64,000 nt of DNA, taken from assembly GCA_030390025.1 (NCBI GenBank), contig CM059441.1, positions 20,708,001 through 20,772,000 of the forward strand, in the 5' to 3' direction. Every line of letters starts with the position of its first letter. Within the stretch, counting starts at the first letter, position 1. Positions 3,853 to 48,778 of this stretch are shown in pieces. The DNA is from Squalus acanthias. Taxonomy: Eukaryota. The notes beneath the pieces were generated by a model. It was not told the origin of the DNA. It saw only the letters and a list, made by a program, of their open reading frames with translations, and searched no databases. Made by a program: the position numbers and the translations under genes.

Positions 3853-4468
3853 GGATGGCATTCATCACCTCTGTATAGTCAAACATCCACCGAAAGATTG
3901 CTATCAAATATCAGAACTTCCATTGTGTAGGAAAAAGTTTATTAGCAAAAATATTGGTGAACAGATTGAACCTCGGTCTCCTGTTGCCATTGTATATGAG
4001 GATGTGCAATTAATTTGATGTGTGATCACTTGACACAATAAGCATCTTGCGTTGCAATGGTGTTAAGAAATAAACCTTATAAAGGCAGTTGGCGGCAATT
4101 TACCGTTACTCTGTAAAACTAAAAATTATTGTCAGCGATATCAGTGGATGAACAGACAACTCATCCGTGTGACATTGAGACATTAGCCCATTTATTTTGA
4201 GATTTACCACGTCTGCTGAAACAGTGGAGAGTGGATTGCAATACAAAAAGCGTTGAGTATTCGCCTGTTACACCGACAGTAATCTCTAGGCTGTATTTCT
4301 TCAAATACCGCCCAGGCTGTAGGATTGAAGCTGTCAGCTGAGATGGAGACACTGAGTAAAATGGAGCTTCCTTATGAAGTTAGCAAGTATCGGTTGACAG
4401 ATGCATTATGATTGAAATGCAAGTGTAGAGCATGGAACTGCTTCTGAAACACCGGCCGTGCTCTCGAA

Positions 4469-4597
4469 CTAGAAAGCCTCCTTGTGCTCATGGTCAGACT
4501 TCTCATAAATATAAGCGGGGACGTCTTCATGTGTCTGAGTGATGGATTTGCGTCTTGCCATGTCAGGTGTGAAATCTTGTCCATCATCCCTGAAAGA
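4469..4597 (-). CDS. Gene A terminal exon, SFRDDGQDFTPDMARRKSITQTHEDVPAYIYEKSDHEHKEAF*
   Basis: Acceptor (T)9-AAAG in phase 0, matching the upstream donor. Ungapped homology to the gene B terminal exon (EDVPAY vs EDAPTY at identical codon positions). TAG at 4469-4471. Confidence 0.75.
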   Translation of the reverse strand, partial: SFRDDGQDFTPDMARRKSITQTHEDVPAYIYEKSDHEHKEAF

Positions 4598-12926: not shown

Positions 12927-12982
12927 CATAGCATTGTAAACTGGGTTAGCTTCTTCCTCTGTGTGTGTTAATCCTTTCTGAC
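12927..12982 (-). CDS. Gene A cytoplasmic exon, (G)QKGLTHTEEEANPVYNAM
   Basis: tcgttcttag acceptor and gtaaga donor, phase 1 to 0. Its 56-nt length and phases are identical to gene B exon 57039-57094. Confidence 0.85.
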
Positions 12983-15262: not shown

Positions 15263-15369
15263 CAGCTGCCGTCTGCTTTCTGGATCTTCTGACAAAAATA
15301 ATAGCAAGAAGGAGCAGTATAACCAAAACTCCGAGCGCAGGTACCAGAATGATGATTAAGTTTGTGGTG
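15263..15369 (-). CDS. Gene A transmembrane exon, TTNLIIILVPALGVLVILLLLAIIFVRRSRKQTAA
   Basis: Polypyrimidine ttcttctgtttccatag acceptor and gtaagt donor, phase 2 to 1. A 23-residue hydrophobic run is followed by the basic stop-transfer RRSRK. Confidence 0.9.
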
Positions 15370-22944: not shown

Positions 22945-23005
22945 CTTTCATTTCCCCAGTCGGTTGTTCTCTGAAGTTCAGTGGTCACTGTTGGTGTTGT
23001 AAGAG
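22945..23005 (-). CDS. Gene A Thr-rich stalk exon, (A)LTTPTVTTELQRTTDWGNE(S)
   Basis: ttgtttttacag acceptor and gtagtt donor, phase 1 to 2, exactly bridging the V exon and the TM exon. Mucin-like Thr/Pro composition. Confidence 0.8.
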
Positions 23006-23463
23006 CTGTAAAAACAACAACAATCTAAGTATTTTGCTGAGGTAAAAGTTTATATCCTGCTTCATGCACATTTTGGCAAATACTTTTTGCCTTTGCTGAA
23101 TTTTGTAACTTGTACTGCACTAGACAGAGCATTACACAGAGTTTTCCGTGAGCTAGAACTATGCAATGCCCAGAAAATACACATTATGTTATGGCAGATG
23201 AACGTCAATTAATATGCATGGGGTGGTGGTCCCTGAAACAATGGTGGCATCACATGTTAATGCAGGCTGGATCTGAGACATACAACAACAACCTGCATTC
23301 ATATAGTGCCTTTAAAGTAGTAAAACGCCCCACGGCGCCAACTCTAGTTGTCATAGATGGATCACGTGGAGGGATAAACAGCTCTGCCAGTGTCAAAGAT
23401 TGCAACATTCAATATTGATGAAGGGCTCAGCTGTTTCTTAGAGCTTTTTGGGACGGGGACAAG

Positions 23464-24308
23464 GGGGGCGATTTTGCCATTGGGGGCGCGTTGGAGGCGG
23501 GACTGCTGCTTGTCGGGTTTCAGTCCCGCCTCCATCGAGTTGTGGCCAACCCACGCTATTTTCCCTTGATTGACCTTGTTAAGCCCGCCCAGCGGGCTGA
23601 GCAGGCCAATTAAGAGGAAGCCGGTTACAGAGAACGTCAGCGTATGACGTTTCATCTGTCAAAAAGTTTTGACAGATGAATTGCCATCATTTGACAGCTC
23701 TGTGAAGCTGTCAAACACTGACATTTTATGTTGTTTGATGAGTCCTTGTATTCAAGACTCATCAAACCTCTTTTGTGAGCAGAAATTAGATGGTTGTTGC
23801 ATCGGAGAATGCAGCAGCCATCTGTCATCACTGCCGGTGAGATGCGAGAGTCTCCGCATCCCCAACTGTTGAAGCCTGCAGGAAGAAACAAAGGTAAGTA
23901 AACATTTTCTATCACTTTACACTCACCTCACATACTTACCTCTCCACACTTGCACCCATCACTTACCTTTACAACGCACTTTTGCACCTCTCTGACCCCC
24001 ACAGACCTACTGCTCGCCTCGGTGGCCCTGGCGGGGTTTCCCGACGTCGGGAAGCCCGCGCCTCTGTTGGAAAAATGGGGATAATCCTCTTAACTGCCTG
24101 TTTACTACCTGTTAACAGGCAGTTAAGTGGCTGTAATCCCCTTCCCGCCTCGAGGAGACGGGACCCGGCATGGGTCGGCTACCCGCCTCCTGGGAAGATG
24201 GCACGGAGGTGAGTTGGGGGCGGGATGGGCACCCGCCCCCAGATTCTGCCATTTTCCCGGCAGTCCCGCCTCCAAACCTGCCTCCCCAGGGCTGGCAAGA
24301 TCACGCTC
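23464..24308. mobile_element. Probable non-autonomous Harbinger-type element
   Basis: Imperfect 16-bp TIR (gggggcgattttgcca vs gagcgtgatcttgcca), AAG on both flanks, GC-rich arms. Confidence 0.5.
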
Positions 24309-25334
24309 AAGAACATTGATTGGCTTGAGTCCTCTTTGACGAATAGTCCAGGGTCCAAATTCTCATATTACAGAACAATAATGGAAAGCCAGACACCCTT
24401 CTTACATTTAATATAAATAGTTACTGATGTAAGAAAACTACTAGGCACTTGGTCTAAGCGTTAAACAAAGCTTTAATCAACTGTTTTACAACATGGAGGT
24501 CTAGTTGTCCTTCTATAGTTCCTGTTAAGACTGTCCCGCGCAAGCTGGGCCCGTGCCCGAGTATTTATACTCTCCCTGGACAGCGCCACCAGCAGGCCTC
24601 CCAGTATTATTTCATAAGTCATTTCCACATGAATGACAAGATTCATGTCAGTTGCTCTACTCAAACTGTACATAATCTTGAAAATTATGAAGGGGTTTGA
24701 TAGGGTAGGACGTAGAGAATATGTTTCCACTTGTGGCCCATAAATGCAAGATAGTCATTAATAAATCCAGTAAAGTATTCAGGAGAAACTTCTTTACCCA
24801 GAGAATGGTTCGAATGTAGTGAATAGCATAGATGCATTTAAGGGAAGCTAGATTCTGTACATGAGGGAGAAAGGAATAGAAGGATTTGCTGATAAGGTGA
24901 GATGAAGTAGGGTGGAAGGAGCCTTGTGTGGAGCACAGCCACTGGCATAGACCAGTTGGGTCAAGTCTCCTGTTTCTGTGCTGTAAATTCTATATAATTC
25001 CATTACTGTGATTAATACTGAGATCAGGCCTGGGTTTCATGCTGGACCTTCCAAAGTCTCTAGGGAAGGTAAGGAGCAAAAGTAAGTGATCCCAAAGGGG
25101 ATCAATTGCCTCAAGATGCAGACCCTGGTTTCCCTGCTGGGAATGATTGAAAGTTTGTTCTTCTCTTTGGCCTGTTGAGGGCCTTGGGCTTCTTCAATCG
25201 GAGGTGCAAGGCGCCGCTCCAATTTTTCGCCGGTAATTGAAGGTGGGCACCTCCTTTTTGTCTCTACCGGTGCAGGCTGCCTGCCCCAAATATTATCCCT
25301 GGGACTTGGGATAGGATCATCACCCTGGAGAGGC

Positions 25335-25850
25335 ACAAGTCAGGAGTGTGACGGAATACGCTCCACTTACCTGGATGAGTGCAGCTCCAACAAAACTCAA
25401 GAAGCTCAACACCATCCAGGGCAAAGCAGCCCGCTTGATTGGCACCCCATCCACCACCTTAAACATTCACTCCCTCCACTACCGGCGCACTGTGGCTGCA
25501 GTGTGTACCATCTACAAGATGCACTGCAGCAACTCGCCAAGGCTTCTTCGGCAGCTCCTCCTAAACCCGCGACCTCTTCCACCTAGAAGGACAAGGGCAG
25601 CAGGCGCATGGGAACACCACCACATCCAAGTTCCCCTCCAAGTCACACACCATCCTGACTTAGGAATATATCGCTGATCCTTCATTGTCGATGGGTCAAA
25701 ATCCTGGAACTCCCTACCTAGCAGCACTGTGGGAGCACCTTCACCACACGGGCTGCAGCGGTTCAAGAAGGTGGCTCACCACCACCTTCTCAAGGGCAAT
25801 AAGGGATGGGCAATAAATGCTGGCCTTGCCAGCGACGCCCACATCCCATA
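25335..25850 (+). mobile_element. Second-family LINE 3' fragment
   Basis: Same motif and tail. Confidence 0.8.
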
Positions 25851-27184
25851 AAAGAACAAAAAAAAAGATTGAAATCCCACCCTCCTGCCTTTCTGGCACG
25901 GGAGCAAGAACCCAGCAATACTGGGCCCTAAATATGATACAGACGCATTACAAAAATTCATACTGAATTACATTTAGTACAAACTAACCTCAGCAGTGAA
26001 CATTGCGCCATTTCTAAATAATTTTGAAATCGAGGAGTTGAGGAATTGAGCGGGACCAAAAGCGGCAAGTAAGCCTGTTCCAGAAATAAGGTCAGCTGCC
26101 AATTTGTTTACCACAGCAGAGACGTCGCTTCTAATTACAGAAAGGCAAGCATTTTATTTTTTGATTAAGTACATATGTCAGCACTGGGGAAATGAAGCAC
26201 TTCTCCTCTTGCGGAACATGCCCGTGTCAAGCACTCCCAAATCAATACAAGATACAGAGTAAGGCGACTTCAGATCTGTCCCAACAGGATGTCTGAACAC
26301 CGGCCTTAAAAAAACATCGCTCTGGTGAACTGGGACACAAGTTTTACACATCCGCCTTTCTTATAATCTTTGAGTGCTACTCTACAGACAGTTTCATTAT
26401 TACGATTTTCATCGCTGTTCACCACTGGCGGCCGTGCCTTCAGCTGCCTGGGCCCTAAGCTCTAAAATTCCCTCCCTAAACCTCTCTGCCTCGCTCTCCT
26501 CCTTTAAGACTCTCCTTAAAACCTACCTCTTTGACCAAGCTTTTGGTCACTTTCCCTAATATCTCCTTAAGTGGCTTGGTGTCAAATTTTGCCTGATAGC
26601 GCTCTTGTGATTCGCCGTGGGACATTTTATTACGTTTAAGGCACTATATAAATGCAAGTTGTTGTTGCTGTTATTGTACTGAGCATACTGGGAACTTAAA
26701 TTAAGCAAACATTGTATCTTTATTTAAAAAAAAAGGGATGAGTCTGATCAAGGCTAGCCTAAAATCAATAACAGCTAAAATAATGAAAACTATTCTAAGG
26801 AGATGGTTAGAGGCAGTGTTGAGAAGTAATTTTAAAAGCAAATACAATTCTGGGACGCATTGCCAGAACAGTGGAATGCCATGCTCCAGAGGTCATGCTG
26901 AGGCCTTCTCATACACTCACTCTCAGGTTCCCCCATCTGATCACTATATAGTCCAGTGCATTGGCAGAAGTGCGTGCGCGTGGACATCCCAAATCCCATC
27001 GGTGGGGCCAATGCTCAGGGTGAACATCCAGGCATGTTGCAGCGCAATAGAAGCACGCACTGTAGGTTTTTCTATAGGTCGAAGATCCGCCACGGTCTTA
27101 TTGAATGGCAGAGCAGGCTAGAACGGATGAATGGCCCACTCCTGCTCCTATTTCTTACATAGGATATTTTTTTAAATTCGCTTT

Positions 27185-28510
27185 TATGGCATGTGGGCGT
27201 CACTGGTAGGGCCAGCATTTATTGTCCACCCCTAGTTGCCCTTGAGAAGGTGGTGGTGAGCAGCCTTCTTGAACCGCTGCAGCCCGTGTGGTGAAGGTAC
27301 TCCCACAGTGCTGTTAGGGAGGGAGTTCCAGGATTTTGACCCAGTGACGATGAAGGATCGGCGATATACTTCTAAGTCAGGATGGTGTGTGACTTGGAGG
27401 GGAACTTGGAGGTGGTGGTGTTCCCATGCGCCTGCTGCCCTTGACCTTCTAGGTGGGAGAGGTTGTGGGTTTGGGAGGTGTTACCAAAGAAGCCTTGGCG
27501 AGTTGCTACAATGCATCTTGTAGATGGTACACACTGCAGCCACGGTATGCCGGCGGTGCAGGGAGTGAATGTTTAAGGTGATGGATGGGGTGCCAATCAA
27601 GCAGGCTGCTCTGTCCTGGATGGTGATGAGCTTCTTGAGTATTGTTGGAGCTGCACTCATCCAGGCAAGTGGAGAGTATTCCATCACACTCCTGACTTGT
27701 GCCTTGTAGATGGTGGAAAGGATTTGGGGAGTCAGAAGGTGAGACACTCGCCGCAGAATACCTAGCCTCTGACCTGTTCTCATTGCCACAGTATTTATGT
27801 GGCTGGTCCAATTAAGTTTCTGGTCAATGGTAACTCCCAGGATGTTGATGGTGGGGGATTTGGCGATGTTAATGCCGTTGAATGTCAAGGGGGCTGTGGT
27901 TAGACTCTCGCTTGTTGGAGATAGTCATTGCCTGGCACTTCTCTGGCGTGAATGTTACCTGCCACTTATCAGCCCAAGCCTGAATGTCGTCCAGGTCTTG
28001 TTGCATGCAGGCATGGACTGCTTCATTATCTGAGGAGTTGTGAATGGCGCTGAACACTGTGCAGTCATCAGCGAACATCCCCATTCCTGACCTTATGTTG
28101 GAAGGAAAGTCATTGATGAAGCAGCTGAAGATGGTTGGGCCTAGGACACTGCCCTGAGGAACTCCTGCAGTGATGTCCTGGGGCTGTGATGATTGACCTT
28201 CAACCATCACAACCATCTTCCTTTGTGCTAGGTATGACTCCAGCCAGTGGAGAGTTTCCCCCCTGATTCACATTGACTTCAGTTTTACTAGGGCTTCTTG
28301 ATGCCACACTCGGTCAAATGCTGCCTTGATGTCAACGGCAGTCACTCTCACCTCACCTCTGGAATTCAGCTCCTTTGTCCATGTTTGGACCAAGGCTGTA
28401 ATGAGGTCGGGTGCCGAGTGGTCCTGGCGGAACCCAAACTGGGCATCAGTGAGCAGGTTATTGGTGAGTAAAAGTGCTGCTTGATAGCACTGTCGATGAC
28501 ACCTTGCTGA
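27185..28510 (-). mobile_element. Second-family LINE fragment including the RT core
   Basis: GVPQGSVLGP and FADD (27869-28216) plus the family tail. Confidence 0.85.
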
Positions 28511-28539
28511 TGATTTCCAGCATGTTTCTTTCTTTTCAG

Positions 28540-28995
28540 TGTCAGCTGTGGCTCAGTGGTTAGTACCATTGCCTCTGAGTCAGAAGGTTGTGGGTTTAAG
28601 TCCCAATCCAGGGACTCTCAGCACGTAAAGCTAGGCTGACACTCCCAGTGGAGTGCTGCACTGTCTGAGGTGCCGTCTTTCAGATAAGACGTTAAAACAA
28701 GGCCCCGTCTGCTCTCTCAGGTGGATGTAAAAGATCCCATGGCACTATTTCGAAGAAGAGCAGAGGAGTTATCCCCGGTGTGCTGGCCAATATTTATCCC
28801 TCAATCAACATCACTATAACAGATTGTCTGGTCATTATCACTTTGCTGTTTGTGGGAGCTTGCTGTGCACAAATTGGCTGCTGCATTTTCTACATTACAA
28901 CAGTGACTACACTTCTAAAGTACTTCATTGGCTGTAAAGCGCCTTGGGACGTCTGGTGATCGAGAAAGGTGCTATAGAAATACAAGTCTTTCTTT
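28540..28995 (+). mobile_element. Deu-domain SINE
   Basis: Full-length family copy. Confidence 0.8.
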
Positions 28996-29215
28996 TCATT
29001 TAAGACTATTTTAATGTAATTCTTCTGCATTATCAGTCAGTCAAATGTATAGGTTGTTTATTGTTCCTGAATATATATTTTAAGTCTGAAAATCCTTTTT
29101 AAATCTCTGATTAAGACCAAGAATGTTTAAACAGATAACAGCCACAAGGAACAGTTCATTTATCGGCATGCTTATACTGTACTTGAAGTAAAAGGTGATT
29201 AATTACTTAACTTAC

Positions 29216-29545
29216 CTTCAAGAACATTCAATTTGACAGGAGCCATTTCATCGTTGCCCAGCATTGCTATCCCACACCAATACCATCCTGCATCTTCGAG
29301 TGATAATTGTTTCATTGTTACAGAGAATATCCCACTGGTTTGGTTGTCCACAATGAGCGGTCTGTTGAATCGTTCCTGTTGTATTCTTTGAGTGCCAGCA
29401 ATCACAGTGCATGAGTTTCTCCGTGTTCCTTTACACCAGTACTTCTCAAAATACCTGTTACTTGGTGTGTTATATCGACAATGGACAGTGATGGATTCTC
29501 CTAATTTTCCAGTCACCTCCCCTGGTCCTATTATTCCGTGTGAAC
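29216..29545 (-). CDS. Gene A IgV exon 3 (membrane-proximal), CD300/pIgR-type V domain
   Basis: 330 nt, phase 1-1, cag acceptor and gtaagt donor. Motifs: B-strand Cys (VHCRY), KYWC-x7-C second disulfide, DAGWYWCG. Confidence 0.92.
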
Positions 29546-32094
29546 CTGTTAGAACAGGGAGCAATGGGTTGTGTCATGACCATGTATTCGAAGAAAGCAT
29601 GGATGAGGAAAAAGCCACTCAATCTAGCGAGCTTGATTCTTCCATTGACCATGTATAATTTGGACTATCACGGACAACTGAGTGATACCAAGAGCACTGC
29701 TTGTCAAGTCCCTTAATGATCATAAATCAGCACAGTGCAAATCCCTTGAAAGGCTTTACTGAAATGTTAGTGACACGAGTTTCGTTTGTAACTGGTCAGT
29801 TTTTCTAGATGTCTGTATGGATTTGTGTTCCACTTTAGTGTTCCGCACTAAACCTTCCTCCAATCTTATTACTATGGTTACATTCAGTCAGAAGTCCTCC
29901 TCCCATCCACATGAAGAATTGGAAGTTATACCTAAAAGGAAAGATTGAACAGGCTGGGGCACTTTTCTCTCGAAAAGAGAAGACTGAAGGGTGAGGTGAT
30001 AGAGGTCTTCAGGATTATGAAAGGGTTCAATAGGGTAGACGTAGAGAAGGTGTTTCCACTTGCGGCCAAGACCAGAACTAGGAGCCATAAATATAAAGTT
30101 AGTCATTAATAAATCTAATAAGGAATTCAGGAGAAACATCATTACCCAGAGAGTGGTCAGAATGTGGAACATCTACCACAAGGGGAAGTTGAGGTGTGTA
30201 GCATGGGTGCATTTAAGGGGAAGCTAGATAAACACATGAGGAAGAAAGGAATAGAAGGATATGTTGATGGGGTTAGATGAAGAGGGGTGGGAGGAGGCTC
30301 ATGTGGAACATAAACACTGGCATGGACCTGTTGGGCCAAATGGCCTGTTTCTGTGCTGTAAATACTTTGTAAGTAAAAATATTTAAAGAAACACATACCT
30401 TTCACCCACTATTCAACCCAATAGCTATGTTGATTTTGTGAACCTAAACAGTAATCATAAAGGCATACTTGATGATTCAGTGGGACCGATTTTCATTCCC
30501 CTGCCAGGTGGAAATAGGGCAGTAGCATGATTAAAATGACAGCACTTACTGCCCCATTCCCATCAACATCGAGATCTCTGTCATTTTTCCAGCGGCCTTG
30601 AAATGGATGGCCCGGGTGCCAGCCAGAAACACGGAAATCGGAGTCCTGTGACATCTATAGGACCCTGGTGCAACTTTACAGTATGAATGGGTGGCGCATG
30701 TGTCGCGTACCTCTGCCCATTGGTACTTGGTATTGAGTAGTCTAACCAGCAGTCCTTAAAGGGCCGCTGCAGCCCACTCAGACAAAGTATTAAAAGAAAG
30801 GGTTTTTACATTATTATTATCAGAAGAGGAGAAGCATTAAAGCACCTTCTGGCTCCACAAATATCGAACACCGCCCCCACCCCCCCCCCCCCCCCACCCC
30901 ATCATCCCCCTTGCCTCACCTTCTGCAGCCCTCCCCACTGCTTTAAATTACCTACAGCAGGCGCTGGGCTCCGCAATAGAGTTGTCAGATCTCTGACCCT
31001 TCCGATCAGCGAGCTGCTCCAAAAATGCGAGCAGTCGCTGAAAATGGATCGGGCCTTGGACCACTTCCACCGGGTAGGTGGTAGGGTCACTCTGCCCATC
31101 TCCTACCAGCCTCCCGCCCGCCCGAGGGAATCGTTCACTTGAAAATCGGTCACAAGAGAACTTAAACTTAAATCAATGGAGAGTAAATTGCTTCATTTAA
31201 AAGTGGTAATTTGCTGAGGATGGGGTGTTGGGTGGTGGTGGTGGTGGGGGGAGGGGGCAAGAAATATGGGGCAAAATGACTAAACACTTGGAGAAACAAG
31301 AGTTCACCAGAAACAAAAAAACAAAAGATGCTGGAAACACTCAGCAGGTCAGTCAGCATCTGTGGAGAGAAACAGACAAGTTAATGTTTTGAGTGTGAAC
31401 GCTTTTTCATAACTGAAAAATAACAGTTAGACCGGCATATTAATTCAATCAGAAAAAGGAAGGGGCGGGGGGGAGTATATATATACCTATAATAAATAAC
31501 AAAAACAATCAAACCCAGAGGAGTATGAGGAGCACAATGTAACAGATCAATCTCATTCAAGTAATGGATAGAAGCATTCAGACATTAAAGAAGCAAAGGG
31601 TGCCAGATGTGAACCAGATGTGGGCCGTGTGGGAGGAGGTGAATGGGCAGGTGCTCCATAGCCTGCGTTTTCACAGGAAGGCGCCAAGGGAAGTGCAGCT
31701 GGAATTAAGCCTCCCACTCACTTTGCTATTTACACACCCTTTGTCTCTTTAATGCCTTAATAATTCTATCCATTATTTGACGATTATTTGCTACATTATA
31801 CCGCACACGATTCCTTTGTTTGTTCGTTATGTACATTTTCCGCCCTCCTTTTTATAATTGCATCGACATGCTTGCCTGCCTCTCTGAAGCATGTTCCGCA
31901 CCTGAAAGATTGGGCCAGGATTTGCTGGGAAAGTAACGGCGACTTTAATGCGGAGGCCGTCATTAGTGTGAGCTCATTAATCATACATTAATGACCAAGA
32001 ATGTTTAAACAGATAACAGCCACAAGGAACAGTTCATTTATCGGCATGCTTATACTGTACTTGAAGTAAAATGGTGATTAATTACTTATCTTAC

Positions 32095-32424
32095 CTTCAA
32101 GAACATTCAATTTGACAGAAGCCATTTCATCGTTGCCCAGCATTGTTATCCCACACCAATACCATCCTGCATCTTCGAGTGATAATTGTTTCATTGTTAC
32201 AGAGAATATCCCACTGGTTTGGTTGTCCACAATGAGTGGTCTGTTGAATCGTTCCTGTTGTATTCTTTGAGTGCCAGCAATCACGGTGCATGAATATCTC
32301 CGTGTTCCTTTACACCAGTACTTCTCAGAATTCCTGTTACTTGGTGTGTTATATCGACAATGGACAGTGATGGATTCTCCTAATGTTCCATTCACCTCCC
32401 CTGGTCCTATTATTCCGTGTGAAC
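32095..32424 (-). CDS. Gene A IgV exon 2
   Basis: 330 nt, phase 1-1, cag acceptor and gtaaga donor. Same motifs, open frame. Confidence 0.9.
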
Positions 32425-34829
32425 CTGTTAGAACAGGGAGCAATGGGTTGTGTCGTGACCATGTATTCGAAGAAAGCATGGATGAGGAAAAAGCCACTCA
32501 ATCTAGCGAGCTTGATTCTTCCATTGACCATGTATAATTTGGACTATCACGGACAACTGAGTGATACCAAGAGCACTGCTTGTCAAGTCCCTTAATGATC
32601 ATAAATCAGCACAGTGCAAATCCCTTGAAAGGCTTTACTGAAATGTTAGTGACACGAGTTTCGTTTGTAACTGGTCAGTTTTTCTAGATGTCTGTATGGA
32701 TTTGTGTTCCACTTTAGTGTTCCGCACTAAACCTTCCTCCAATCTTATTACTATGGTTACATTCAGTCAGAAGTCCTCCTCCCATCCACATGAAGAATTG
32801 GAAGTTATACCTAAAAGGAAAGATAGAACAGGCTGGGGCACTTTTCTCTCGAAAAGAGAAGACTGAAGGGTGAGCTGATAGAGGTCTTCAGGATTATGAA
32901 AGGGTTCAATAGGGTAGACGTAGAGAAGGTGTTTCCACTTGCGGCCAAGACCAGAACTAGGAGCCATAAATATAAAGTTAGTCATTAATAAATCTAATAA
33001 GAAATTCAGGAGAAACATCATTACCCAGAGAGTGGTCAGAATGTGGAACATCTACCACAAGGGGAAGTTGAGGCGTGTAGCATAGGGGCATTTAAGGGGA
33101 AGCTAGATAAACACATGAGGAAGAAAGGAATAGAAGGATATGTTGATGGGGTTAGATGAAGAGGGGTGGGAGGAGGCTCATGTGGAACATAAACACTGGC
33201 ATGGACCTGTTGGGCCAAATGGCCTGTTTCTGTGCTGTAAATACTTTGTAAATAAAAATATTTAAAAAAAACACATACCTTTCACCCACTATTCAACCCA
33301 ATAGCTATGTTGATTTTGTGAACCTAAACAGTAATCATAAAGGCATACTTGATGATTCAGTGGGACCGATTTTCATTCCCCTGCCAGGTGGAAATAGGGC
33401 AGTAGCATGATTAAAATGACAGCACTTACTGCCCCATTCCCATCAACACCGAGATCTCTGTCATTTTTCCAGGGGCCTTGAAATGGATGGCCCGGGTGCC
33501 AGCCAGAAACACGGAAATCGGAGTCCTGTGACATCTATAGGACCCTGGTGCAACTTTACAGTACCAATGGGTGGCGCATGTGTCGCATACCTCTGCCCAT
33601 TGGTACTTGATATTGATTAGCCTAACCAGCAGTCCTTAAAGGGCCGCTGCAGCCCACTCAGACAAAGTATTAAAAGAAAGGGTTTTTACATTATTATTAT
33701 CGGAAGAGGAGGAGCATTAAAGCTCCTTCTGGCCCCACAAATATCAAACCCCCTTGCCTGACCTTCTGCAGCCCTCCTCACTCCTTTAAATCACCTACAC
33801 CGGGTAGGTGGCAGGGTCACTCTGCCCATCTCCTGCCCACCCGAGGGAATCGTTCACTTGAAAATCAGTCACAAGAGAACTTAAACTTAAATCAATGGAG
33901 AGTAAATCTTACAGATCTTACATATCATTGCTTCATTTAAAAGTGGTAATTTGCTGAGGATGGGGTGTTGGGTGGTGGTGGTGGGGGGGGGGGGGGTGAA
34001 GAAATATGGGGCAAGATGACTAAACACTTGGAGAAACAAGAGTTCACCAGAAACAAAAAAACAAAAGATGCTGGAAACACTCAGCAGGTCAGTCAGCATC
34101 TGTGGAGAGAAACAGACAAGTTAACGTTTTGAGTGTGAACGCTTCTTCATAACTGAAAAATAACAGTTAGACCGGCATATTAATTCAATCAGAAAAAGGA
34201 AAGGGGGGAGTATATATATACCTATAATAAATAACAAAAGCAATCAAACCCAGAGGAGTATGAGGAGCACAATGTAACAGATCAATCTCATTCAAGTAAT
34301 GGATAGAAGCATTCAGACATTAAAGAAGCAAAGGGTGCCAGATGTGAACCAGATGTGGGCCGTGTGGGAGGAGGTGAATGGGCAGGTGCTTCATAGCCTG
34401 CGTTTTCACAGGAAGGCGCCAAGGGAAGTGCAACTGGAATTAAGCCTCCTACTCACTTTGCTATTTACACACCCTTTGTCTCTTTAATGCCTTAATAATT
34501 CTATCCATTATTTGACGATTATTTGCTACATCATACCGCACACGATTCCTTTGTTTGTTCGTTATGTACATTTTCCACCCTCCTTTTTATAATTGCATCG
34601 ACATGCTTGCCTGCCTCTCTGAAGCATGTTCCGCACCTGAAAGATTGGGCCAGGATTTGCTGGGAAAGTAACGGCGACTTTAATGCGGAGGCCGTCATTA
34701 GTGTGAGCTCATTAATCATACATTAATGACCAAGCATGTTTAAACAGATAACAGTCACAAGGAACAGTTCATTTATCAGCATGCTTATACTGTACTTGAA
34801 GTAAAATGGTGATTAATTACTTATCTTAC

Positions 34830-35159
34830 CTTCAAGAACATTCAATTTGACAGAAGCCATTTCATCGTTGCCCAGCATTGTTATCCCACACCAATACCAT
34901 CCTGCATCTTCGAGTGATAATTGTTTCATTGTTACAGAGAATATCCCACTGGTTTGGTTGTCCACAATGAGTGGTCTGTTGAATCGTTCCTGTTGTATTC
35001 TTTGAGTGCCAGCAATCACGGTGCATGAATATCTCCGTGTTCCTTTACACCAGTACTTCTCAGAATTCCTGTTACTTGGTGTGCTATATCGACAATGGAC
35101 AGTGATGGAGTCTCCTAAAGTTGCAGTCACCTCCCCTGGTCCCATTATTCCGTGTGAAC
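34830..35159 (-). CDS. Gene A IgV exon 1 (N-terminal)
   Basis: 330 nt, phase 1-1, tag acceptor and gtaaga donor. Same motifs, open frame. Confidence 0.9.
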
Positions 35160-36041
35160 CTATTAGAACAGGGAGCAATGGGTTGTGTCGTGACCATGTA
35201 TTCGAAGAAAGCATGGATGAGGAAAAAGCCACTCAATCTAGCGAGCTTGATTCTTCCATTGACCATGTATAATTTGGACTATCACGGACAACTGAGTGAT
35301 ACCAAGAGCACTGCTTGTCAAGTCCCTTAATGATCATAAATCAGCACAGTGCAAATCCCTTGAAAGGCTTTACTGAAATGTTAGTGACACGAGTTTCGTT
35401 TGTAACTGGTCAGTTTTTCTAGATGTCTGTATGGATTTGTGTTCCACTTTAGTGTTCCGCACTAAACCTTCCTCCAATCTTATTACTATGGTTACATTCA
35501 GTCAGAAGTCCTCCTCCCATCCACATGAAGAATTGGAAGTTATACCTAAAAGGAAAGATAGAACAGGCTGGGGCTCTTTTCTCTCGAAAAGAGAAGACTG
35601 AAGGGTGAGCTGATAGAGGTCTTCAGGATTATGAAAGGGTTCAATAGGGTAGACGTAGAGAAGGTGTTTCCACTTGCGGCCAAGACCAGAACTAGGAGCC
35701 ATAAATATAAATTTAGTCATTAATAAATCTAATAAGAAATTCAGGAGAAACGTCATTACCCAGAGAGTGGTCAGAATGTGGAACATCTACCACAAGGGGA
35801 AGTTGAGGCGTGTAGCATAGGTGCATTTAAGGGGAAGCTAGATAAACACATGAGGAAGAAAGGAATAGAAGGATATGTTGATGGGGTTAGATGAAGAGGG
35901 GTGGGAGGAGGCTCATGTGGAACATAAACACTGGCATGGACCTGTTGGGCCAAATGGCCTGTTTCTGTGCTGTAAATACTTTGTAAGTAAAAATATAAAA
36001 AAAAACACATACCTTTCACCCACTATTCAACCCAATAGCTA

Positions 36042-37467
36042 AAGAACATAGAACATAGAACAGTACAGCACAGTACAGGCCCTTCGGCCCTCGATGTTGT
36101 GCCGAGCATTGTCCGAGACCAAGATCAAGCTATCACACTCCCCATCACTCTGGTGTGCTCCATGTGCTTATCCAATAACCGCTTGAAAGTTCCTAAAGTG
36201 TCTGACTCCACTATCACAGCAGGCAGTCCATTCCACACCCCAACGACTCTCTGAGTAAAGAATCTACCTCGGACATCCCTTCTATATCTCCCCCCATGCA
36301 CCTTATAGTTATGCCCCCTTGTAACAGCTGCCTCTACCCGAGGAAATAGTCTCTGAACATCCACTCTATCTATCCCCCTCATCATCTTATAAACCTCTAT
36401 TAAGTCGCCTCTCATCCTCCTCCGCTCTAAAGAGAAAAGCCCCAACTCCCTCAATCTTTCCTCATAAGACCTCCCCCCCAAACCAGGCAGCATCCTGGTA
36501 AATCTCCTTTGCACTCTTTCCAATGCTTCCACGTCCTTCCTATAGTGAGGTGACCAGAACTGCACACAATATTCCAAATGTGGTCTCACCAAGGTCCTGT
36601 ACAGTTGCAGCATAACCTCACGGTTCTTAAACTCAAAACCTCTGTTAATAAACGCCAACACACCATAGGCCTTCTTTACTGCTCTATTAATTTGAGTGGC
36701 AACCTTCAGAGATCTGTGGATATGAACCCCCAGATCCCTCTGCTCCTCCACGTTCCTCAGAACCCTGCCGTTGACCCTGTAATCCTTATTCAAATTTGCC
36801 CTACCAAAATGAATCACCTCGCACTTATCAGGGTTAAATTCCATCTGCCATTTTTCGGCCCAGCTCTGCATCCTATCAATGTCTCTTTGCAGCCTACAAC
36901 AGCCCTCCACCTCATCCACTGCTCCACCAATCTTGGTGTCATCAGCAAATTTACTGATCCACCCTTCAGTCCCCTCCTCCAAGTCATTGATAAAAATCAC
37001 AAACAGCAGAGGACCCAGCACCGACCCCTGTGGCACACCGCTGGTAACTGGTCTCCAGTCCGAAAATGTTCCATCCACCACCACCCTCTGCCTTCTATGA
37101 GATAGCCAGTTACTTATCCAATCGGCCAAATTTCCCTCTATCCCACAACTCCTTACTTTCTTCATGAGCCGACCATGGGGAACCTTATCAAACGCCTTAC
37201 TAAAATCCATGTATACGACATCAACTGCTCTACCTTCATCTACACACTTAGTTACCTCCTCAAAGAATTCAATCAAATTTGTTAGGCAAGACTTACCCTT
37301 CATGAATCCGTGTTGACTATCCCTGATTAAGTTGCCCCTTTCCAAATGGTCATAAATCCTATCCCTCAGGACCTTTTCCATTATCTTACCAACCACCGAA
37401 GTAAGACTAACCGGCCTATAATTACCAGGGTCATTCCTATTTCCTTTCTTGAAGAGAGGAACAACAA
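36042..37467 (-). mobile_element. Young 5'-truncated CR1 LINE with an uninterrupted 423-aa RT/C-terminal frame
   Basis: GVPQGSVLGP, FADD and YCVQFW motifs, and a (TTCTATG)n 3' tail. The empty site aatagctatgttg is visible in repeat units 1 and 2. Confidence 0.95.
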
Positions 37468-38949
37468 TGTTGATTTTGTGAACCTAAACAGTAATCATAA
37501 AGGAATACTTGATGATTCAGTGGGACCGATTTTCATTCCCCTGCCAGGTGGAAAAAGGGCAGTAGCATGATTAAAATGACAGCACTTACTGCCCCATTCC
37601 CATCAACATCGAGATCTCTGTCATTTTTCCAGGGGCCTTGAAATGGATGGCCCGGGTGCCAGCCAGAAACACCGAAATCGGAGTCCTGTGACATGTATAG
37701 GACCCTGGTGCATCTTTACAGTATGAATGGGTGGCGCATGTGTCGCGTACCTCTGCCCATTGGTACTTGGTATTGAGTAGTCTAACCAGCAGTCCTTAAA
37801 GGGCCGCTGCAGCCCACTCAGACAAAGTATTAAAAGAAAGGGTTTTTACATTATTATTATCAGAAGAGGAGGAGCATTAAAGCACCTTCTGGCCCCACAA
37901 ATATCAAACCCCCTTGCCTGACCTTCTGCAGCCCTCCTCACTCCTTTAAATCACCTACACCGGGTAGGTGGTAGGGTCACTCTGCCCATCTCCTGCCCAC
38001 CCGAGGAAATCGTTCACTTGAAAATCAGTCACAAGAGAACTTAAACTTAAATCAATGGAGAGTAAATCTTACAGATCTTACATATCATTGCTTCATTTAA
38101 AAGTGGTAATTTGCTGAGGATGGGGTGTTGGGTGGTGGTGGGGGGGGGGCGGGGGGGCAAAGAAATATGGGGCAAAATGACTAAACACTTGGAGAAACAA
38201 GAGTTCACCAGAAACAAAAAAACAAAAGATGCTGGAAACACTCAGCAGGTCAGTCAGCATCTGTGGAGAGAAACAGACAAGTTAACGTTTTGAGTGTGAA
38301 CGCTTCTTCATAACTGAAAAATAACAGTTAGACCGGCATATTAATTCAATCAGAAAAAGGAAAGGGGGGAGTATATATATACCTATAATAAATAACAAAA
38401 ACAAAAACAAAAACAAGCAAACCCAGAGGAGTACGAATAGCATAATGTAACAGATCAATCTCATTCAAGTAATGGATAGAAGCATTCAGACATTAAAGAA
38501 GCAAAGGGTGGCAGATGTCAACCAGATGTGGACCGTGTGGGAGGAGGTGAATGGGCAGGTGCTGCATCGCCTGTGTTTTCACAGGAAGGCGCCAAGGGAA
38601 GTGCAACTGAAAGTAAGCCTCCCACAAACTTTGCTATTTACACACCCTTTGTCTCTTTAATGCCTTAATAATTCCATCCATTATTTGACGATTTTTTGCT
38701 ACATCATACCGCACACGATTCCTCTGTTTGTTCGTTATGCACAATTTCCGCCCTCCTTTTTATAATTGCATCGACATGCTTGCCTGCCTCTCTGAAGCAT
38801 GTTCCGCACCTGAAAGATTGGGCCAGGATTTGCTGGGAAAGTAACGGCGAGTTTAATGCGCAGGCCGTCATTAGTGTGAGCTCATTAATCATACATTAAT
38901 GAGCTGACCTCCCTATATTCCATACCCCTTAATCTTCTCAAAGTACCAG

Positions 38950-48729: not shown

Positions 48730-48778
48730 CTGATAACGAAAGAGTGATGAGGATGATAGTAAATGCAATGTTTTTCAT
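48730..48778 (-). CDS. Gene A first coding exon, signal peptide MKNIAFTIILITLSLS(G)
   Basis: AACATG start, basic residue then hydrophobic core, gtaagg donor in phase 1. It joins to GSHG-IMGP of the V exon, completing a typical signal peptide. Confidence 0.85.

What the first reader, a model, noticed from the sequence alone, without database searches (positions are those of the whole stretch)
29115..38902. Recent intragenic triplication of the ligand-binding V exon, with all three copies splice-competent
Seen: three ~2.8-kb units, each with an intact 330-nt phase 1-1 exon. By my manual count the exons differ by 6 nt (V1 vs V2) and 10 nt (V2 vs V3). There is only one signal exon and one stalk/TM set. 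Each exon starts with GSHG, the signal-peptide tail, which becomes an interdomain linker. Inference: symmetrical phases permit 1-, 2- or 3-domain isoforms or cassette choice among V variants, so domain multiplication is caught in progress and copy number may be polymorphic.
Basis: partly seen in the sequence, partly recalled or inferred. Interest (0 to 1): 0.8.

Follow-up and report, generated by a model that had tools for sequence, protein, structure and literature searches.

The report
Tripled V exon in shark pIgR-like receptor
A shark immune-receptor gene of the pIgR/CD300 type carries three near-identical tandem copies of its outer binding-domain exon; this kind of duplication looks common in the family, and nothing yet shows that the copies are expressed.

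Summary
On the minus strand, 29110-38902 is a tandem array of three units of about 2.7-2.9 kb (the third is 4.2 kb because of a LINE insertion). Each unit carries an open 330-nt V-set exon with an AG acceptor, a GTAAG donor and phase 1-1. The exons differ by 6, 10 and 14 nt. There is one signal exon, one stalk exon and one TM exon.

The gene is the counterpart of shark "polymeric immunoglobulin receptor-like" genes. All nine shark species compared have two different V domains, Va then Vb. This window has Va three times and no trace of Vb.

The array began at a 7-nt microhomology. The copies have since exchanged sequence: the middle copy is a mosaic (runs test P=2e-4). Seven of eight variant letters in contigs of two DNA runs are the letter of a sister copy.

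The copies diverge by 2-3%, exons as fast as introns (pN/pS 0.7-1.4), so "recent" is relative and selection on the copies is not shown.

Two small putative RNA runs gave no cover on any V exon. Isoforms and copy-number polymorphism are therefore untested.

Near-identical V pairs occur in 32 of the 150 best-scoring family representatives, so this is a new case of a known kind.

The parts
29110..38902 (-). Tandem array of three repeat units (C 29110-31986, B 31987-34721, A 34722-38902). It lies inside the intron region between the signal exon and the stalk exon.
34830..35159 (-). V exon A, first in the transcript. 330 nt, phase 1-1, acceptor taatag|, donor |gtaaga.
32095..32424 (-). V exon B, the middle copy. 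330 nt, phase 1-1. It is a mosaic: the 5' third is C-like and the rest A-like.
29216..29545 (-). V exon C, the copy nearest the membrane. 330 nt, phase 1-1, donor |gtaagt.
36042..37467 (-). 5'-truncated LINE inserted in unit A only. It has an open 452-aa reverse-transcriptase frame at 36128-37483 (Pfam RVT_1). It was inserted after the duplication.
48730..48778 (-). Signal exon from the ATG: MKNIAFTIILITLSLS plus the first base of the Gly codon. Donor |gtaagg, phase 1.
22945..23005 (-). Stalk exon, 61 nt, phase 1 in and phase 2 out (ALTTPTVTTELQRTTDWGNE). It accepts the phase-1 donor of any V exon.
15263..15369 (-). Transmembrane exon, 107 nt, phase 2 in and phase 1 out.
12927..12982 (-). Cytoplasmic exon holding NPVY.
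4469..4597 (-). Last coding exon, up to the stop codon.

Best explanation
The region belongs to a minus-strand gene for a type I membrane receptor of the pIgR/CD300 V-domain family. It is the counterpart of the genes that NCBI names 'polymeric immunoglobulin receptor-like' in sharks.

The ancestral shark ectodomain was two different V domains, Va then Vb. In this genome Vb is gone, and the Va exon with about 2.4 kb of upstream intron and 106 nt of downstream intron has been multiplied to three tandem copies.

Shown:
- The first duplication joined two points that share the microhomology ATTAATG.
- The copies later exchanged sequence by unequal crossing-over and/or gene conversion, which left the middle copy a patchwork of its neighbours.
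- A LINE then entered the upstream unit.

Inferred: because every V exon has consensus splice sites, an open frame and phase 1-1, the default mRNA should string all three together (signal, V, V, V, stalk, TM, tail with NPVY; 463 codons). This gives a longer ectodomain made of three nearly identical binding domains. In-frame skipping of one or two copies is possible but unproven.

The extra copies currently evolve about as fast as their introns. They are either young and redundant, or diversifying in their loops. The data cannot tell which.
For: Array and exons.

Family:
- Pfam V-set.
- Best solved relatives are pIgR (E 1e-53, several domains) and CD300f/CLM-1 (E 3e-22).
- Named shark homologues.

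Orthology and architecture:
- The signal peptide, TM exon and tail exons match the shark proteins.
- In nine species the protein reads Va-Vb-stalk-TM-tail.
- In the tree, the three window exons form one clade (96/91) among the Va domains. Vb is a separate clade (99/96) of 10 rows from all nine species.
- A Vb HMM hits only the three Va exons in the whole window (E about 1e-40); the next hit has E 1.7.

Mechanism:
- Junction letters.
- Site patterns are A-unique 42, C-unique 37, B-unique 17 and three-way 3 of 2711 aligned columns.
- The patterns are clustered: 43 runs against 59.5 expected, P=0.0002.
- Seven of eight variant letters in contigs of runs X1 and X5 equal the letter of a sister copy.

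Frames: all exon phases fit and the lengths sum to 1392 nt.

Precedent:
- The Scyliorhinus torazame model holds two Vb domains 95.5% alike. A skate model holds four V domains up to 99% alike.
- 32 of 150 top representatives hold a V pair at least 90% alike.
Against: - No RNA evidence at all. X21 and X22 gave zero depth on the three exons, and no close short protein fragments are in the collection.
- pN/pS of 1.42, 0.66 and 0.85 rests on only 6-14 changes. It does not show constraint, so one or two copies could be unused.
- In run X5, contigs at 99% likeness or more covered exon B but not A or C. In X1, exon C was barely covered. The tool warns that holes prove nothing. Three units in other individuals are therefore not shown.
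- I could not see spanning long reads, so the assembly of the array is not independently verified.
- The orthologous genomic loci could not be fetched. How and when Vb was lost is unknown.
- The 150 proteins are ranked by summed score, which favours multi-domain models. Some of them fuse neighbouring genes.
Confidence: 0.62

Rival explanations
1. Only one V exon is used. The other copies are young, redundant pseudo-exons that are skipped or are drifting towards loss, so the receptor has a single V domain.
For: The exons diverge as fast as or faster than the surrounding intron: 1.8-4.2% against 2.0-2.9%. pN/pS is about 1. There is no RNA cover. With about 14 substitutions, open frames could persist by chance.
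Against: All three copies keep AG/GT sites, the frame, four cysteines and the Trp and YWCG core. Their flanking introns are nearly identical, so exon definition should be equal. Orthologues have two or three V domains, and public gene models of relatives include tandem near-identical V exons in series.
Confidence: 0.22
2. The copies act as alternative cassettes, by mutually exclusive or combinatorial splicing. One gene would then give several receptor variants that differ in their binding loops.
For: Phase 1-1 keeps every combination in frame. Of the 11 amino-acid positions that differ, I place five (26, 32, 33, 94, 103) in or at the edge of the stretches that align with the pIgR D1 CDR1 and CDR3 regions. 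The loop borders are recalled.
Against: No sequence feature enforces exclusivity. The introns are 2.4-2.5 kb, the sites are ordinary U2-type, and there is no frame penalty for inclusion. No transcripts were seen. The differences between copies are few and fit neutral drift.
Confidence: 0.08
3. Assembly artefact: fewer units exist, and allelic or mis-joined reads were laid out in tandem.
For: Near-identical 2.8-kb tandem units are hard to assemble. No spanning read was seen. One X1 contig joins B-type to C-type sequence (33926 to 31187).
Against: The units differ structurally. The 1426-nt LINE is in A only. About 160 nt of extra sequence are in C only. There are 99 variable columns. Contigs of two runs begin 22 nt before a unit junction and read through it; this is less than the 31 letters the tool asks for bridging. 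B-specific exon sequence is present in both X1 and X5. The B/C joint has 35 shared letters and may itself be a graph path or an allele.
Confidence: 0.05

Closest known systems
Shark 'polymeric immunoglobulin receptor-like' gene models (Heterodontus francisci P0153, Mustelus asterias P0156, Cetorhinus maximus P0151, Heptranchias perlo P0002 and five others)
   Same: The signal peptide is MKNI.F.I.LI..SLSGSHG-like. The Va domain is 65-82% identical to the window exons. The stalk, TM and tail carry NPVY and YIYEK. An ITIM-bearing single-V gene lies upstream.
   Different: All nine have a second, different V domain (Vb, about 50% identical) after Va. The window has three Va copies and no Vb. Nine of nine have I/R-T/R-Y-D in the tail where the window reads FTPD.
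Scyliorhinus torazame P0001/P0160 and Leucoraja erinacea P0003/P0161 models with near-identical tandem V domains
   Same: Lineage-specific multiplication of one V domain inside a receptor of the same family. The pairs are 95.5% and up to 99% identical.
   Different: In S. torazame the Vb domain is doubled and Va is kept single. In the skate, four copies of another V type occur. These are predicted models, and I did not see their genomic structure.
[quoted passage not shown]
   Same: [quoted passage not shown] This is the same broad family in the same animal group.
   Different: I did not have MDIR sequences, and the original paper (Cannon et al. 2006, Immunogenetics 58:362) is not held. Membership is therefore untested. 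That MDIRs have variable numbers of modular V domains is recalled, not seen.
Tetrapod and teleost pIgR
   Same: It is the best sequence match among solved structures, and all five domains of mammalian pIgR align. Its ectodomain was built by serial duplication of one V-type domain. The CDR1-equivalent stretch shares N-R and KYWC with pIgR D1.
   Different: pIgR domains are old and divergent, not 94-95% identical. No binding of polymeric Ig is shown here. Akula et al. 2014 (PMC4016189, passages read) reported no PIGR homologue in shark data of that time. That rabbit pIgR has a splice form lacking D2-D3 is recalled, not checked.
CD300 / CMRF35-like molecules
   Same: Same V-domain type (CD300f E 3e-22). 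They occur in paired activating/inhibitory gene clusters.
   Different: The solved CD300/CLM chains that matched are single V domains. This gene encodes three in series.

Membership tests
Immunoglobulin V-set domain (PF07686) | Match to the Pfam profile above the gathering score | tested here: met
   61-62 bits against a cut-off of 26, over the full profile, for all three exons
pIgR/CD300-type V domain | Closest solved relatives are pIgR and CD300 domains. A second cysteine pair (KYWC...C) is present besides the canonical pair (the definition is recalled). | tested here: met
   pIgR E 1e-53, CD300f E 3e-22. Four Cys are kept in all three copies.
Shark pIgR-like 'gene A' orthologue group | Va-type first domain | tested here: met
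   The window exons form a clade (96/91) among the Va domains and lie outside the Vb clade (99/96).
Shark pIgR-like 'gene A' orthologue group | Vb-type second domain between Va and the stalk | tested here: not met
   A Vb HMM built from nine species finds only the three Va exons in 64 kb; the next hit has E 1.7. tblastn agrees.
Shark pIgR-like 'gene A' orthologue group | Stalk, TM and tail with NPVY, ITYD and YIYEK | tested here: inconclusive
   The stalk, TM, NPVY and YIYEK are present. ITYD is replaced by FTPD.
True pIgR | Binds J-chain-containing polymeric Ig and transcytoses it | not testable with these tools
   Sequence likeness only. Akula 2014 found no shark PIGR.
MDIR (skate modular domain immune-type receptors) | Sequence membership in the MDIR clade | not tested
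   No MDIR sequence was at hand. The original paper is not held.
Tandem exon array shaped by unequal crossing-over or gene conversion | Mosaic, clustered sharing of variants between copies | tested here: met
   Runs test gives 43 runs against 59.5 expected, P=0.0002. Seven of eight variant letters in other runs equal sister-copy letters.
Alternatively spliced cassette exons | Transcripts with different exon sets | tested here: inconclusive
   Two putative RNA runs gave no cover of any V exon. No fragments were found in the protein collection.

The most novel reading that the evidence does not exclude
The three-exon array is a germline diversification device. Frequent unequal exchange and gene conversion between the copies would make individuals differ in the number and mosaic make-up of their V domains. 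In-frame exon skipping would add isoforms. One shark pIgR-like receptor gene would then yield a population-wide and cell-wide repertoire of ectodomains. This would have followed replacement of the ancestral Vb domain by copies of Va.
Probability: 0.12. Interest if true: 0.6.

Novelty: new member of a known kind. Interest (0 to 1): 0.3.

Why it matters
It is a clean, datable example of how multi-domain Ig receptors such as pIgR are built. A V exon with symmetric phases is copied in tandem at a microhomology and then reshuffled by exchange between the copies. Here this also comes with loss of the ancestral second domain, which nine other sharks keep. It gives a simple test system: PCR from signal exon to stalk exon should give a 330-nt ladder. 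That would show whether new domain copies are used at once, skipped or polymorphic. It does not open a new kind of biology, because near-identical V pairs are frequent in predicted proteins of the family.

Tried and rejected
- Vb search. I looked for a Vb exon or a remnant with tblastn of three shark proteins and with an HMM of nine Vb domains against all six-frame pieces. Neither found anything.
- Signal exon. I scanned 38.9-54 kb for ATG-hydrophobic-phase-1 candidates. Only 48778-48730 matched orthologues.
- Gene A against gene B by DNA showed only interspersed repeats.
The Vb deletion and the age of the array relative to speciation could not be mapped.
- RNA. X21 and X22 lay only on repeats. 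A search for short translated fragments of 76-243 aa found only distant proteins from a salmonid and a lungfish.
- A first self-BLAST screen for internal repeats in 150 homologues gave nothing, because BLAST drops contained hits. It was replaced by HMM domain cutting.
- A single unequal crossover as the whole history is rejected. The low-coordinate half shows 12 A-unique against 1 B-unique site and several switches (my tally from the site list; clustering tested). Further conversion is needed to explain this.
- Contig depth as a copy count is rejected, as the tool warns.
- Literature. Six searches were run. I read passages of PMC4016189, PMC3031540 and bioRxiv 10.1101/2022.04.21.489081. I found no paper on this shark gene or on tandem V-exon duplication in shark pIgR-like genes. 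Cannon 2006 and Cannon 2010 are not held. Supplementary files were not opened.
- Earlier notes of the scan by words gave nothing relevant.
Full report
**What is there.** The stretch 29110-38902 is a head-to-tail array of three units. The repeat finder gave three-copy families with spacings of 2879-2880, 2735-2740 and 4160-4173. Self-BLAST gave 96-98% identity over 1.3-2.3 kb between units. The units on the + strand are C (29110-31986), B (31987-34721) and A (34722-38902). A is longer because of a 1426-nt insertion at 36042-37467. The window has no N.

**The exons.** The coding strand is the minus strand. Each unit holds one open stretch that Pfam scores as a V-set domain, at 61-62 bits against a cut-off of 26. 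The exons are 35159-34830 (A), 32424-32095 (B) and 29545-29216 (C), each 330 nt. Each follows a pyrimidine-rich tract and taatag| or taacag|, and is followed by |gtaag. Each is in phase 1-1 and starts (G)SHG. They differ by 6 nt (A/B), 10 nt (B/C) and 14 nt (A/C).

**The gene around it.** tblastn with shark homologues, plus direct reading, gave the following:
- Signal exon 48778-48730: MKNIAFTIILITLSLS plus one base, donor gtaagg.
- Stalk exon 23005-22945: 61 nt, phase 1 in and phase 2 out.
- TM exon 15369-15263: phase 2 in and phase 1 out.
- Cytoplasmic exon 12982-12927, holding NPVY.
- Last exon 4597-4469.

All phases fit. The exon lengths sum to 1392 nt, or 464 codons, with three V exons, and any number of V exons keeps the frame. 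I summed lengths only and built no joined model. The TM exon cannot follow a V exon directly because its phase is 2, so the 61-nt stalk exon is needed. Exons of an upstream gene with an ITIM-type tail lie at 60158-60036, 57095-57036 and 54369-54181.

**What family.** A full HMMER scan of 1.84 billion representatives with exon B found 2573 proteins at E up to 0.001. The best were multi-V proteins. Sources name the closest ones 'polymeric immunoglobulin receptor-like'. They come from Scyliorhinus torazame, S. canicula, Cetorhinus, Heptranchias, Heterodontus, Chiloscyllium, Stegostoma, Rhincodon and Mustelus. Among solved structures the best matches are pIgR (E 1e-53, with all domains aligning) and CD300f/CLM-1 (3e-22), followed by other CD300 chains, NKp44, TREM2 and the Fc-mu receptor. 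Passages of PMC3031540 describe skate 'modular domain immune-type receptors' as CD300/pIgR-like receptors of cartilaginous fish. The original paper is not held. Akula et al. 2014 reported no PIGR homologue in the shark data of the time (PMC4016189, passages).

**Ancestral architecture and what changed.** In all nine shark species the matching protein reads signal, Va, Vb, stalk, TM, tail. Several of these models are fused to the neighbouring genes. Va is 65-82% identical to the window exons and Vb about 50%. In a maximum-likelihood tree of 31 domains, the three window exons form one clade (96/91) among the Va domains. Vb forms its own clade (99/96) of 10 rows from all nine species. An HMM built from the nine Vb domains hit only the three Va exons among the six-frame pieces of 15 aa or more of the 64-kb window (E about 1e-40); the next hit had E 1.7. 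This genome therefore has Va three times and no Vb. The 6.2 kb between exon C and the stalk exon, where Vb should lie, holds decayed LINE reverse-transcriptase frames.

**How the array arose.** Both internal junctions read ...CATTAATCATAC|ATTAATGACCAAG. The array's high-coordinate end reads ...CATACATTAATG|AGCTGAC, and its low-coordinate start is ATTAAGACCAAG. The two original breakpoints therefore share ATTAATG, a microhomology and not an interspersed repeat.

Of 2711 aligned ungapped columns, 99 vary: A alone differs at 42, C alone at 37, B alone at 17, and all three differ at 3. The patterns come in blocks, with 43 runs against 59.5 expected and P=0.0002 by shuffling:
- The high-coordinate 450 nt of B are C-like.
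- Most of the exon and the sequence below it is A-like.
- The 5' third of exon B is C-like again.
- A cluster of B-only changes lies at the position matching 30684-30844.

In the low-coordinate part (29110-30205 in C coordinates) I tallied 12 A-only sites against 1 B-only site from the list. One crossover cannot give this pattern, so repeated exchange between copies is needed. K2P distances are 0.023 (A/B), 0.021 (B/C) and 0.031 (A/C). At recalled vertebrate neutral rates of 0.5-2e-9 per site per year, that is roughly 8-30 million years for A/C, and conversion makes it an underestimate. The LINE in A has an open 452-aa frame and is absent from B and C, so it came later.

**Selection.** Nei-Gojobori counts give pN/pS of 1.42 (A/B; 5 non-synonymous, 1 synonymous), 0.66 (B/C; 7, 3) and 0.85 (A/C; 10.5, 3.5). 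The exons (1.8-4.2% different) are no better conserved than the rest of the unit (2.0-2.9%). Eleven amino-acid positions differ. Positions 26, 32 and 33 fall in the stretch aligned with pIgR D1 CDR1, and 94 and 103 fall at the CDR3 stretch (loop borders recalled). The four cysteines, the Trp and the DAGWYWCG core are unchanged. The numbers are too small to separate relaxed constraint from loop diversification.

**Reads.** Unit B was found in five DNA runs of one species label, from two samples (shares 0.69-0.72), and in no run on record as RNA. I laid 29160-35159 at 99% likeness on X1, X5, X21 and X22. All four are Logan contigs.
- The two putative RNA runs lay only on interspersed repeats inside the introns and had zero depth on all three exons. 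There is therefore no evidence of expression, and none of absence, because the runs are small.
- X5 comes from another sample. It has contigs over exon B (31965-32348, 32319-32457, 32428-32600) with two other letters, and none at this stringency over exons A and C.
- X1 has an exact piece of exon B and a contig over exon A with two other letters.
- Contigs in both DNA runs start 22 nt before a unit junction and read through it. This is short of the 31 letters the tool asks for bridging.
- One X1 contig joins B-type sequence (33813-33926) to C-type sequence (31187-31346). With 35 shared letters it may be an allele or a graph path.
- Seven of the eight other letters are the letter that a sister copy carries at the homologous site. 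This fits ongoing exchange between copies, or further mosaic alleles.
- One of these variants removes the N-G-T sequon that only exon B has in the window.
- The number of units in other animals was not determined.

**How unusual it is.** Among the 150 best representatives, 149 have two or more V domains. Of the 150, 32 hold a pair at least 90% identical, 20 of them at least 95%. The ranking favours multi-domain models, and some models fuse neighbouring genes. Examples are S. torazame with two Vb at 95.5%, a skate with four V up to 99%, and a stingray with two at 92%. The two skate isoforms and the two stingray isoforms differ in the C-terminal part, not in V number. Va and Vb group together on the tree apart from the V domains of the neighbouring genes, although Va itself is not resolved as a clade. 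Vb also begins with a short G-rich segment like the leader tail. The two-domain ancestor therefore probably arose the same way. Tandem copying of a V exon is thus the family's usual mode of growth. What is particular here is the loss of Vb and the clear record of the mechanism.

**Verdict.** My best reading is a lineage-specific rebuilding of a shark pIgR-like receptor ectodomain from Va+Vb to Va x3. It happened by microhomology-mediated duplication followed by unequal exchange, and the default product has three V domains. This is a new member of a known kind, of modest interest.

Noticed in passing
window 4469-4597 (minus strand, last exon): Nine of nine shark orthologues read I/R-T/R-Y-D (mostly ITYD) in the tail where this gene reads FTPD, so one conserved tyrosine motif is lost. 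NPVY and YIYEK are kept. Together with the loss of Vb and the neutral-looking V copies, this may mean relaxed constraint on the whole gene.
   Followed up: partly
window 23005-29216 (minus strand): This is the interval where the Vb exon of the orthologues should lie. It holds no Vb trace, but it does hold decayed LINE reverse-transcriptase frames at about 27235-28617.
   Followed up: partly
window 33564-33724 (unit B; matches 30684-30844 of unit C): Nine changes unique to unit B cluster within about 160 nt, while B-unique changes are rare elsewhere. This may be a conversion tract from a donor outside the array, or a mutation hotspot.
   Followed up: no
window 36042-37467: A 5'-truncated LINE lies in the sense orientation in unit A only. 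It has an uninterrupted 452-aa RT frame, and its 3' end is made of short ATGTTCT-like repeats. No target-site duplication is evident at the borders.
   Followed up: partly
proteins P0152, P0153, P0154, P0005, P0156, P0160, P0002, P0151, P0155: Public gene models in nine shark species fuse the upstream ITIM gene and/or the downstream inhibitory gene with the pIgR-like gene into one protein. This is likely read-through or a prediction artefact, and it inflates domain counts in database surveys.
   Followed up: no
protein P0151 (Cetorhinus), residues 404-622: The downstream neighbour gene part of this model has two V domains that cluster with each other (98/94). This is an independent V duplication in another gene of the cluster.
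   Followed up: no
window 33813-33926 joined to 31187-31346 (run X1 contig): A 274-nt contig is B-type on one side and C-type on the other, at homologous points. It could be a mosaic allele, a fourth unit or an assembly-graph path.
   Followed up: no
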